From the NCBI GenBank assembly GCA_964252035.1, contig OZ176206.1: a DNA stretch of 64,000 nt. One strand, written 5' to 3'. Below are positions 30,957 to 34,138 of the stretch, one piece after another. Under the pieces are notes generated by a model. The model was not told the origin of the DNA. It made no database searches and saw only the letters and a program-made list of their open reading frames with translations. This DNA comes from Podarcis erhardii. Taxonomy: Eukaryota. Both the position numbers and the translations under genes were made by a program. Positions within the stretch are counted from its first letter, which is position 1. Each line of letters begins with the position of its first letter.

Positions 30957-34138
<3,182 letters not shown>

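What the first reader, a model, noticed from the sequence alone, without database searches (positions are those of the whole stretch)
32291..32317. Ferroxidase centre dismantled and charge-reversed (EESLKKRGY in place of HQSHEEREH)
Seen: aligned to human H chain, E27, Y34, E107 and Q141 are kept but E61->K, E62->K, E64->G and H65->Y. Established: E62 and H65 are di-iron ligands, and E62K/H65G abolishes ferroxidase activity; L chains instead use cavity glutamates at about 57/60/61/64 for nucleation, and here 60, 61 and 64 are L, K and G. Inference: the subunit is neither a ferroxidase nor an L-type nucleator and would present a basic inner surface, suggesting a different cargo or a structural, chaperone or dominant-negative role while the fold is preserved.
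Basis: partly seen in the sequence, partly recalled or inferred. Interest (0 to 1): 0.85.

Follow-up and report, generated by a model that had tools for sequence, protein, structure and literature searches.

The report
Ferroxidase-dead ferritin gene shared by lizards
This lizard gene encodes a normally folded, expressed ferritin that has lost its iron-oxidising, iron-nucleating and iron-entry residues; the same changes occur in the same genomic position across lizards and geckos, so it is an old, maintained non-catalytic ferritin, not an assembly quirk.

Summary
Bases 32291-32317 encode EESLKKRGY in exon 2 of an intact four-exon, 176-aa ferritin gene (30957-34138, + strand). An ungapped alignment places it at human H-chain residues 57-65, giving E61K, E62K, E64G and H65Y, with E27, Y34, E107 and Q141 kept.

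The changes are not private to this assembly.
- Five other lacertid species share the motif unchanged.
- Orthologues in geckos, skinks, an anguid and iguanians sit in the same ZBTB8A / ferritin / ZBTB8OS (archease) interval.
- These orthologues form one clade.
- K61, E58, F137 and H168 are fixed in 11 of 11 members and K134 in 10 of 11. Positions 64 and 65 drift.

The gene is functional.
- dN/dS is 0.14-0.30.
- RNA contigs from related species splice exactly as modelled.
- An AlphaFold model of the 96%-identical Podarcis orthologue matches frog M and human H ferritin at TM 0.94-0.95.
- There is no IRE.

The protein is therefore a non-catalytic ferritin subunit. It is not L-type: lizards have a separate L clade. 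It works most like mammalian FTHL17 (E62K, no ferroxidase activity).

The cargo and chaperone ideas are untested. This is a new variant of a known kind, of moderate interest. The scan had already noted the gene and its three-fold channel changes on this same window.

The parts
30759..30956 (+). 5' UTR (about 198 nt), without an iron-responsive element
   Evidence: A 797-nt RNA contig of a related species starts at 30759 and runs into exon 1 (record 17). There is no IRE by Rfam or by motif scan.
30957..31058 (+). Exon 1, 34 codons (helix A; E27 and Y34 retained)
   Evidence: ATG and GT donor. The splice joint 31058 to exon 2 is seen in RNA contigs of two runs.
32234..32380 (+). Exon 2, 49 codons (helix B)
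   Evidence: AG/GT boundaries. Pfam PF00210. Ungapped match to human H-chain residues 39-86.
32291..32317 (+). The finding: EESLKKRGY = H-chain positions 57-65. K61 is 32303-32305, K62 is 32306-32308, G64 is 32312-32314 and Y65 is 32315-32317.
   Evidence: Translation, numbering, clade conservation.
33195..33320 (+). Exon 3, 42 codons (helix C; E107 retained)
33983..34138 (+). Exon 4, 51 codons plus TGA (helices D and E). H131 is 33989-33991, K134 is 33998-34000, F137 is 34007-34009 and H168 is 34100-34102. Q141 is retained.
34139..34207 (+). Short 3' UTR with AATAAA at 34195-34200
   Evidence: Sequence. The RNA contig ends at 34207.
26357..26977 (+). Upstream neighbour: last coding exon of the BTB-zinc-finger gene (ZBTB8A-like)
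   Evidence: 90% identical over 121 aa to the BTB/zf-H2C2_2 gene upstream of the Paroedura orthologue. The same neighbour is present in Podarcis, Sceloporus and Tiliqua.
36370..36722 (-). Downstream neighbour: archease (ZBTB8OS-like) exons
   Evidence: tblastn matches to the archease gene region of Paroedura L002. Archease is downstream on the minus strand in Podarcis, Sceloporus and Tiliqua.

Best explanation
The window carries a functional, transcribed ferritin paralogue that lies between ZBTB8A and ZBTB8OS in squamate reptiles. It keeps the ferritin fold. It has lost the di-iron ferroxidase ligands E62 and H65. It has also lost the transit and nucleation carboxylates E61 and E64 and the three-fold entry-channel carboxylates (E134K, and in lacertids D131H). 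It therefore most likely cannot oxidise, admit or nucleate iron on its own. It would act as a non-catalytic ferritin subunit, either in heteropolymers with the intact ferritin paralogues that lizards also have, or as an iron-poor cage with a regulatory role. This is analogous to mammalian FTHL17. Shown: the gene model, splicing and transcription in relatives, conserved synteny, clade-wide fixation of K61, E58, K134, F137 and H168, purifying selection, a preserved predicted fold, and the absence of an IRE. Inferred: loss of enzymatic activity, from the established effect of E62K in H chains; a K62 salt bridge to E107/E27 as in L chains; offsetting of the K61/K62 charges by E58; and the cellular role.
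For: The gene model is intact with canonical splice sites. One 797-nt RNA contig joins all four exons exactly as modelled in a relative. A second run shows exon depths of about 96-271 against mostly 2-12 in intron bins; a few intron bins are higher. The motif is identical in five other lacertid species. Related motifs occur in geckos, skinks, Elgaria, Sceloporus, Phrynosoma and Anolis. The same BTB-ZF / ferritin / archease order is found in Paroedura, Podarcis, Sceloporus and Tiliqua. The clade is monophyletic with SH-aLRT 99. It stays monophyletic at 97/77 when the trait columns are masked. Pairwise dN/dS is 0.14-0.30 among seven orthologues. Fixed clade-specific changes, measured against 46 relatives, are Q58E, E61K, Y137F and Y168H in 11 of 11 and E134K in 10 of 11. 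The AF2 model has pLDDT 90.4 and TM 0.94-0.95 to frog M and human H ferritin. E62K alone is reported as sufficient to abolish ferroxidase activity, and FTHL17 (E62K) has none (review PMC7760355).
Against: There is no biochemical assay. E27, Y34, E107 and Q141 are kept, and the new invariant E58 lies one helical turn from position 62, so a residual or altered metal site cannot be excluded. The tissue of expression is unknown because run metadata are coded. The whole window protein could not be submitted to the database tools, so the structural model is of the 96%-identical Podarcis orthologue. No snake, varanid, agamid or teiid orthologue appeared among the listed hits, so the gene may be dispensable in some lineages, or the hit lists were simply capped.
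Confidence: 0.65

Rival explanations
1. It is a functional analogue of the L chain. It would be a structural subunit whose main job is to co-assemble with catalytic chains and tune cage stability and iron turnover, with K62 replacing the metal site by a salt bridge.
For: E62K is the same substitution as in L-type chains (lizard and panda L-type rows). E107 and E27 are retained as possible partners. The fold and overall length are unchanged. Intact paralogues exist in the same genomes.
Against: Lizards already have a true L-type gene in a separate clade with E60/E61/E64. This protein lacks those nucleation carboxylates and also has lysine at channel position 134, which L chains do not. Co-assembly is untested.
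Confidence: 0.3
2. It is a decaying or functionless duplicate, and the motif is simply drift after loss of function.
For: Positions 64 and 65 vary freely within the clade. The clade evolves about 1.5 times faster than its relatives. dN/dS between close lacertids is 0.30-0.46.
Against: The reading frame and all splice sites are intact in seven species whose CDS was extracted from genomic DNA and that span crown Squamata. dN/dS is well below 1 in every pair. New residues K61, E58, F137 and H168 are invariant. The gene is spliced and abundant in RNA contigs.
Confidence: 0.04
3. It retains an altered metal-handling activity, using E27, E107, Q141 and Y34 plus the new E58 and E57, for a different metal or a slower oxidation.
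For: Four of the six classical site residues are retained, and Q58E is invariant on the same helix one turn from position 62.
Against: E62 bridges both irons, and E62K is reported as sufficient to abolish activity (PMC7760355). A lysine at 62 would occupy the site. Q141 is E in phrynosomatids, and position 65 is unconstrained. The entry-channel residue 134 is a lysine.
Confidence: 0.08

Closest known systems
Mammalian FTHL17 (ferritin heavy polypeptide-like 17)
   Same: It is an H-like ferritin with E62K and a changed residue 61, with no ferroxidase activity reported (PMC7760355). Marsupial proteins that NCBI names FTHL17 (E62K, with introns) fall in the same amniote clade as this gene.
   Different: Human FTHL17 is X-linked (PMC7760355) and, from my own knowledge, intronless. 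This gene has four exons and lies between ZBTB8A and ZBTB8OS. FTHL17 keeps H65, and the marsupial proteins that NCBI names FTHL17 keep the channel carboxylates D131/E134. This gene has K61, Y65, H131 and K134. Orthology to eutherian FTHL17 was not tested because no eutherian sequence was retrieved.
Vertebrate L-type ferritin (FTL; 'ferritin light chain, oocyte isoform-like' in lizards)
   Same: It is non-catalytic, with K at position 62, E107 retained and the same fold.
   Different: It belongs to a separate clade (99 SH-aLRT). L-type chains have E60/E61/E64 and D131/E134, and F at position 27. This protein has L60, K61, G64, H131, K134 and E27.
Frog M and H ferritin and the amniote 176-aa 'ferritin heavy chain A/B-like' paralogues
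   Same: These are the closest sequences and structures. Identity is 64% to frog M with TM 0.94 and 72-75% to intact squamate, turtle and tuatara paralogues. Exon structure and length are the same.
   Different: Those proteins keep QSHEEREH, D131/E134, Y137 and Y168. This clade replaces them.
Crocodilian 'ferritin heavy chain' (Gavialis, Alligator, Crocodylus; QSHEHREQ)
   Same: It lacks E62 and H65 (E62H, H65Q). It is sister to the lizard clade in the masked-trait tree at 94/86.
   Different: It keeps E61, D131, E134, Y137 and Y168. No ZBTB8A or archease was found within 10 kb, so orthology is unproven.

Membership tests
Ferritin (Pfam PF00210, eukaryotic 24-mer type) | Ferritin-like four-helix bundle plus a short E helix; match to PF00210 | tested here: met
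   PF00210 gives 114 bits for the 96%-identical Podarcis orthologue and matches exons 2-4 of the window. The AF2 model shows helices A-E with pLDDT 90.4. TM is 0.94-0.95 and rmsd 1.3 A to frog M and human H ferritin.
Ferritin (Pfam PF00210, eukaryotic 24-mer type) | Assembly into a 24-subunit cage | not testable with these tools
   Only a monomer was modelled. This needs SEC or EM.
Catalytic H/M-type ferritin | Complete di-iron ferroxidase centre: E27, Y34, E62, H65, E107, Q141 | tested here: not met
   E62K and H65Y, with the other four residues kept.
Catalytic H/M-type ferritin | Acidic three-fold entry channel (D131, E134) | tested here: not met
   H131 and K134 in the window. K134 is present in 10 of 11 clade members, against E134 in 46 of 46 relatives.
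L-type ferritin | Descent from the FTL lineage | tested here: not met
   Lizard and panda L-type chains form a separate clade (SH-aLRT 99). The window protein nests among H/M-like 176-aa chains.
L-type ferritin | Cavity nucleation carboxylates at 57/60/61/64 (H numbering) | tested here: not met
   E57, L60, K61, G64.
IRE-regulated cytosolic ferritin | Iron-responsive element in the 5' UTR | tested here: not met
   No IRE family match at gathering score in the whole window or at E up to 10 in 28500-31200. No C-bulge/CAGUGN motif in the RNA-defined 5' UTR.
FTHL17 | E62K with loss of ferroxidase activity | tested here: inconclusive
   E62K is met. Activity was not assayed. The FTHL17 properties come from PMC7760355.
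FTHL17 | Orthology to the eutherian X-linked intronless gene | not tested
   No eutherian FTHL17 sequence was retrieved. This gene has three introns and a different genomic neighbourhood.

The most novel reading that the evidence does not exclude
Squamates, and possibly diapsids if the crocodilian E62H/H65Q gene is the orthologue, have kept an 'iron-blind' ferritin cage since their common ancestor. It lacks catalytic, nucleation and entry-channel residues together and has acquired new invariant residues (E58, K61, K134, F137, H168). That would point to a non-iron function, such as a regulatory, germline or nuclear role evolved in parallel with mammalian FTHL17, or a different cargo.
Probability: 0.3. 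Interest if true: 0.65.

Novelty: new variant of a known kind. Interest (0 to 1): 0.45.

Why it matters
Ferritins without ferroxidase activity are already known (L chains, FTHL17). In this clade the catalytic site, the nucleation carboxylates and the three-fold channel carboxylates are all changed. The protein nevertheless stays under purifying selection, stays expressed, and sits at one fixed locus in lineages from geckos to iguanians. That makes it a natural, evolution-tested 'empty' ferritin. It could be used to ask what a ferritin cage does when it cannot handle iron, and which residues matter for assembly alone. It also shows that automatic names for these lizard genes, such as 'ferritin heavy chain A-like' or 'B-like', hide a functionally distinct subunit. 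No paper on it was found.

Tried and rejected
- **IRE control: rejected.** No IRE was found in the window by Rfam or by motif scan. None was found near the turtle, echidna or gharial paralogues either. Absence of an IRE is therefore probably a family trait and not special to this gene.
- **Private or assembly-specific change: rejected**.
- **Pseudogene: rejected**.
- **L-chain orthologue: rejected**.
- **Second ferritin copy in the window:** none found.
- **Whole-protein searches:** the spliced window protein has no reference, so exon 2 was used for the exhaustive search and orthologue ids were used afterwards.
- **** failed because the frame was off by one base, and **** exceeded the size limit. 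Both were corrected.
- **Synteny outside squamates could not be settled.**
  - Monodelphis returned no DNA.
  - The tuatara protein P0251 (E62K/H65N) is not on record by position.
  - The Gavialis, Emydura and echidna loci show only tandem ferritins within 10 kb.
- **Tissue of expression:** not obtainable, because run metadata are coded.
- **Literature searches** for ferritin with ZBTB8OS, squamate, lizard or gene-family evolution found nothing relevant.

Full report
**Observation**

Bases 32291-32317 on the + strand translate to EESLKKRGY. They lie in exon 2 of a four-exon gene. The exons are 30957-31058, 32234-32380, 33195-33320 and 33983-34138, the last including the TGA stop. Every intron is GT-AG and phase 0, and the exon sizes are 34/49/42/51 codons, giving a 176-aa protein.

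phmmer aligns exon-2 residues 2-49 without gaps to residues 39-86 of the 182-residue human H chain. Own residue j therefore corresponds to H-chain residue j+3, and the motif covers positions 57-65. This gives Q58E, H60L, E61K, E62K, E64G and H65Y. E27, Y34, E107 and Q141 are retained.

**Is the gene real and used?**

- The window holds one ferritin copy.
- Logan contigs from RNA libraries of related species were laid on 30300-34400.
  - In one run, a single 797-nt contig joins 30759-31058, 32236-32377, 33192-33320 and 33983-34207.
  - This is the predicted mRNA, with a 5' UTR of about 198 nt and an end just after the AATAAA at 34195.
  - In a second run the same joints have depth 105-219. Exon bins reach about 96-271, while most intron bins lie between 2 and 12; a few intron bins are higher, including a peak at 33451-33587 that appears in all four runs.
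  - Minor alternative donors exist at 30862 and 33333.
- Pfam PF00210 matches exons 2-4, and matches the full-length lacertid orthologues at 111-114 bits.

**Is the motif private?**

No. The exhaustive search with exon 2 found a Paroedura picta (gecko) protein with the identical [11 protein letters not shown]. Later searches and cluster look-ups gave the following.

| Taxon | Result |
|---|---|
| Podarcis muralis, P. lilfordi, P. raffonei, Lacerta agilis, Zootoca vivipara | Differ from the window protein at 4-7 residues, none in the motif or at 131/134 |
| Elgaria | KESLKKREY |
| Sceloporus, Phrynosoma | KESLKKRGD |
| Anolis | KESLKKSAD |
| Euleptes | EESLKKRGY |
| Heteronotia | EESFKKREN |
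| Tiliqua | AESLKCREQ |
| Lerista | AESLKRRDH |

The window genome is therefore a lacertid, and the changes are shared across lineages from geckos to iguanians.

**Orthology**

The window has BTB-zinc-finger (ZBTB8A-like) exons upstream and archease (ZBTB8OS-like) exons downstream on the minus strand. An RBBP4-like exon and a syncoilin-like ORF lie further on. The same order, BTB-ZF then ferritin then archease, is annotated around the orthologue in Paroedura, Podarcis (plus RBBP4), Sceloporus and Tiliqua. All seven orthologues whose DNA I fetched have the same exon layout.

In a tree of 87 vertebrate ferritins the 11 proteins form one clade with SH-aLRT 99. I then masked the trait columns (12, 57-65, 131-137, 168). 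The clade still held at ultrafast bootstrap 97 / SH-aLRT 77, and in 98% of bootstrap trees. Its internal order, with geckos branching first, fits vertical descent.

The clade nests inside an amniote group of 176-aa 'heavy chain A/B-like' ferritins. That group also contains intact squamate, turtle and tuatara paralogues, echidna, and the marsupial proteins that NCBI names FTHL17. Lizard L-type chains are a separate clade.

**What changed, and what is constrained**

Compared with 46 relatives that keep the site:

| Position (H numbering) | In the clade | In 46 relatives |
|---|---|---|
| 58 | E, 11 of 11 | Q, 44 of 46 |
| 61 | K, 11 of 11 | E, 45 of 46 |
| 62 | K 9, R 1, C 1 | E in most rows printed |
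| 134 | K, 10 of 11 | E, 46 of 46 |
| 137 | F, 11 of 11 | Y, 38 of 46 |
| 168 | H, 11 of 11 | Y, 46 of 46 |
| 64 | variable: G/E/A/D | E, 38 of 46 |
| 65 | variable: Y/D/N/Q/H | H, 41 of 46 |

Residue 131 is H only in lacertids, N in two geckos and D elsewhere. So the metal-site-A ligand position 65 is simply released, while a new set of residues is held fixed.

Pairwise dN/dS among the seven orthologues is 0.14-0.30 by NG86 and 0.10-0.46 by ML. This indicates purifying selection, although the clade's branches are about 1.5 times longer than those of its relatives.

The protein stays net acidic at -6, with a clade range of -1 to -10 and a median of -8 in relatives. Residues 57-65 move from about -3 to about +1 net charge, counted from the residues. 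The segment is neutralised rather than made basic.

**Structure**

An AlphaFold2 model of the Podarcis muralis orthologue was built with a 78-sequence alignment. That orthologue is 96% identical to the window protein and identical at every site discussed. The model has mean pLDDT 90.4 and helices at 11-39, 46-72, 93-120, 124-154 and 161-172. Foldseek gives TM 0.94-0.95 and rmsd 1.3 A to frog M ferritin (64% identity) and human H ferritin (60% identity). The fold is preserved.

**Regulation**

No IRE was found in the window at Rfam gathering score. None was found at E up to 10 in 28500-31200. A C-bulge/CAGUGN motif scan of the RNA-defined 5' UTR also found none. The turtle, echidna and gharial paralogue loci also lack one, so this is probably a feature of the whole amniote family.

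**Mechanism**

Established knowledge: E62 bridges the two irons, H65 binds site A, and E62K alone is reported to be sufficient to abolish ferroxidase activity. FTHL17, which has E62K, has no ferroxidase activity, is partly nuclear and is expressed in germ cells (review PMC7760355).

Inference: this lizard subunit cannot oxidise iron. With K61 and G64 it lacks the carboxylates that pass iron to the cavity and nucleate the core. With K134 (and H131 in lacertids) its three-fold pores are no longer cation-attracting. K62 probably pairs with E107/E27 as in L chains, and the invariant E58 may offset K61/K62.

I commit to a non-catalytic ferritin subunit. It would either be a partner for the intact paralogues present in the same genomes or form an iron-poor cage with a regulatory role. 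My confidence is 0.65 for the loss-of-iron-handling and maintained-function core. The specific cellular role is open.

**Comparison and novelty**

It works most like FTHL17 and, secondarily, like L chains. It is not an L chain by descent or by nucleation residues, and orthology to eutherian FTHL17 was not testable here.

Loss of E62 has happened repeatedly in this family:
- marsupials (E62K);
- a second lacertid paralogue (E62K/H65D);
- a tuatara paralogue (E62K/H65N);
- crocodilians (E62H/H65Q).

The gharial protein is sister to the lizard clade at 94/86 in the masked tree, which hints at an older origin, but synteny is unproven.

The lizard proteins are already in databases under automatic names such as 'ferritin heavy chain A-like' or 'B-like'. 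I found no paper on them. I rate this a new variant of a known kind, with interest 0.45.

**Limits**

- The spliced window protein could not be submitted as a whole, so orthologue ids served as proxies.
- There are no tissue metadata.
- There is no biochemistry.
- The hit lists were capped, so absence in snakes, varanids, agamids and teiids is not established.

Noticed in passing
window 33986-34000 and 34007-34009, 34100-34102: The three-fold channel residues are H131 and K134. K134 is fixed in 10 of 11 clade members, against E in 46 of 46 relatives. Y137F and Y168H are also invariant in the clade.
   Followed up: yes
window 30862 and 33333: RNA contigs of a related species show alternative splice donors. 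One, at 30862 in the 5' UTR, skips the ATG-bearing part of exon 1. The other lies 13 nt into intron 3. Lacerta agilis has annotated isoforms of 162 and 141 aa that may correspond to them.
   Followed up: partly
window 23807-23881: A tRNA-like match (32.9 bits) lies inside the ZBTB8A-like gene region. A similar one occurs in the Podarcis locus L004 at 17590-17648. These are probably tRNA-derived SINEs.
   Followed up: no
L001 16170-17816 (Gavialis); L003 (Emydura, three genes); L005 (echidna, two genes): The related 176-aa ferritins lie in tandem clusters in a crocodilian, a turtle and a monotreme. No canonical IRE motif is detectable nearby.
   Followed up: partly
P0285/P0359-P0362 (lacertids), P0251 (tuatara), P0166/P0366/P0367 (crocodilians), P0048/P0202 (marsupials): There are other losses of E62, usually together with H65, in other members of the same amniote ferritin family, which may be independent events: E62K/H65D, E62K/H65N, E62H/H65Q and E62K. 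Ferroxidase loss appears to be recurrent in the family.
   Followed up: partly
P0001/P0211-P0213 (Hemicordylus capensis): Gene models of 299-348 aa fuse several tandem ferritin copies with degenerate site motifs (KKKSQDSWEH, EQQSQEMRGH). This is probably a mis-merged cluster of further divergent paralogues.
   Followed up: no
L006 6102/6103 (Elgaria): Intron 1 of the Elgaria orthologue has a GC-AG boundary instead of GT-AG.
   Followed up: no
window 32234-32236: The window has TAC (Tyr35) where most other lacertids and the RNA contigs of relatives have Ser (TCC). P. raffonei shares the Tyr. It is a minor lineage difference next to the splice acceptor.
   Followed up: partly
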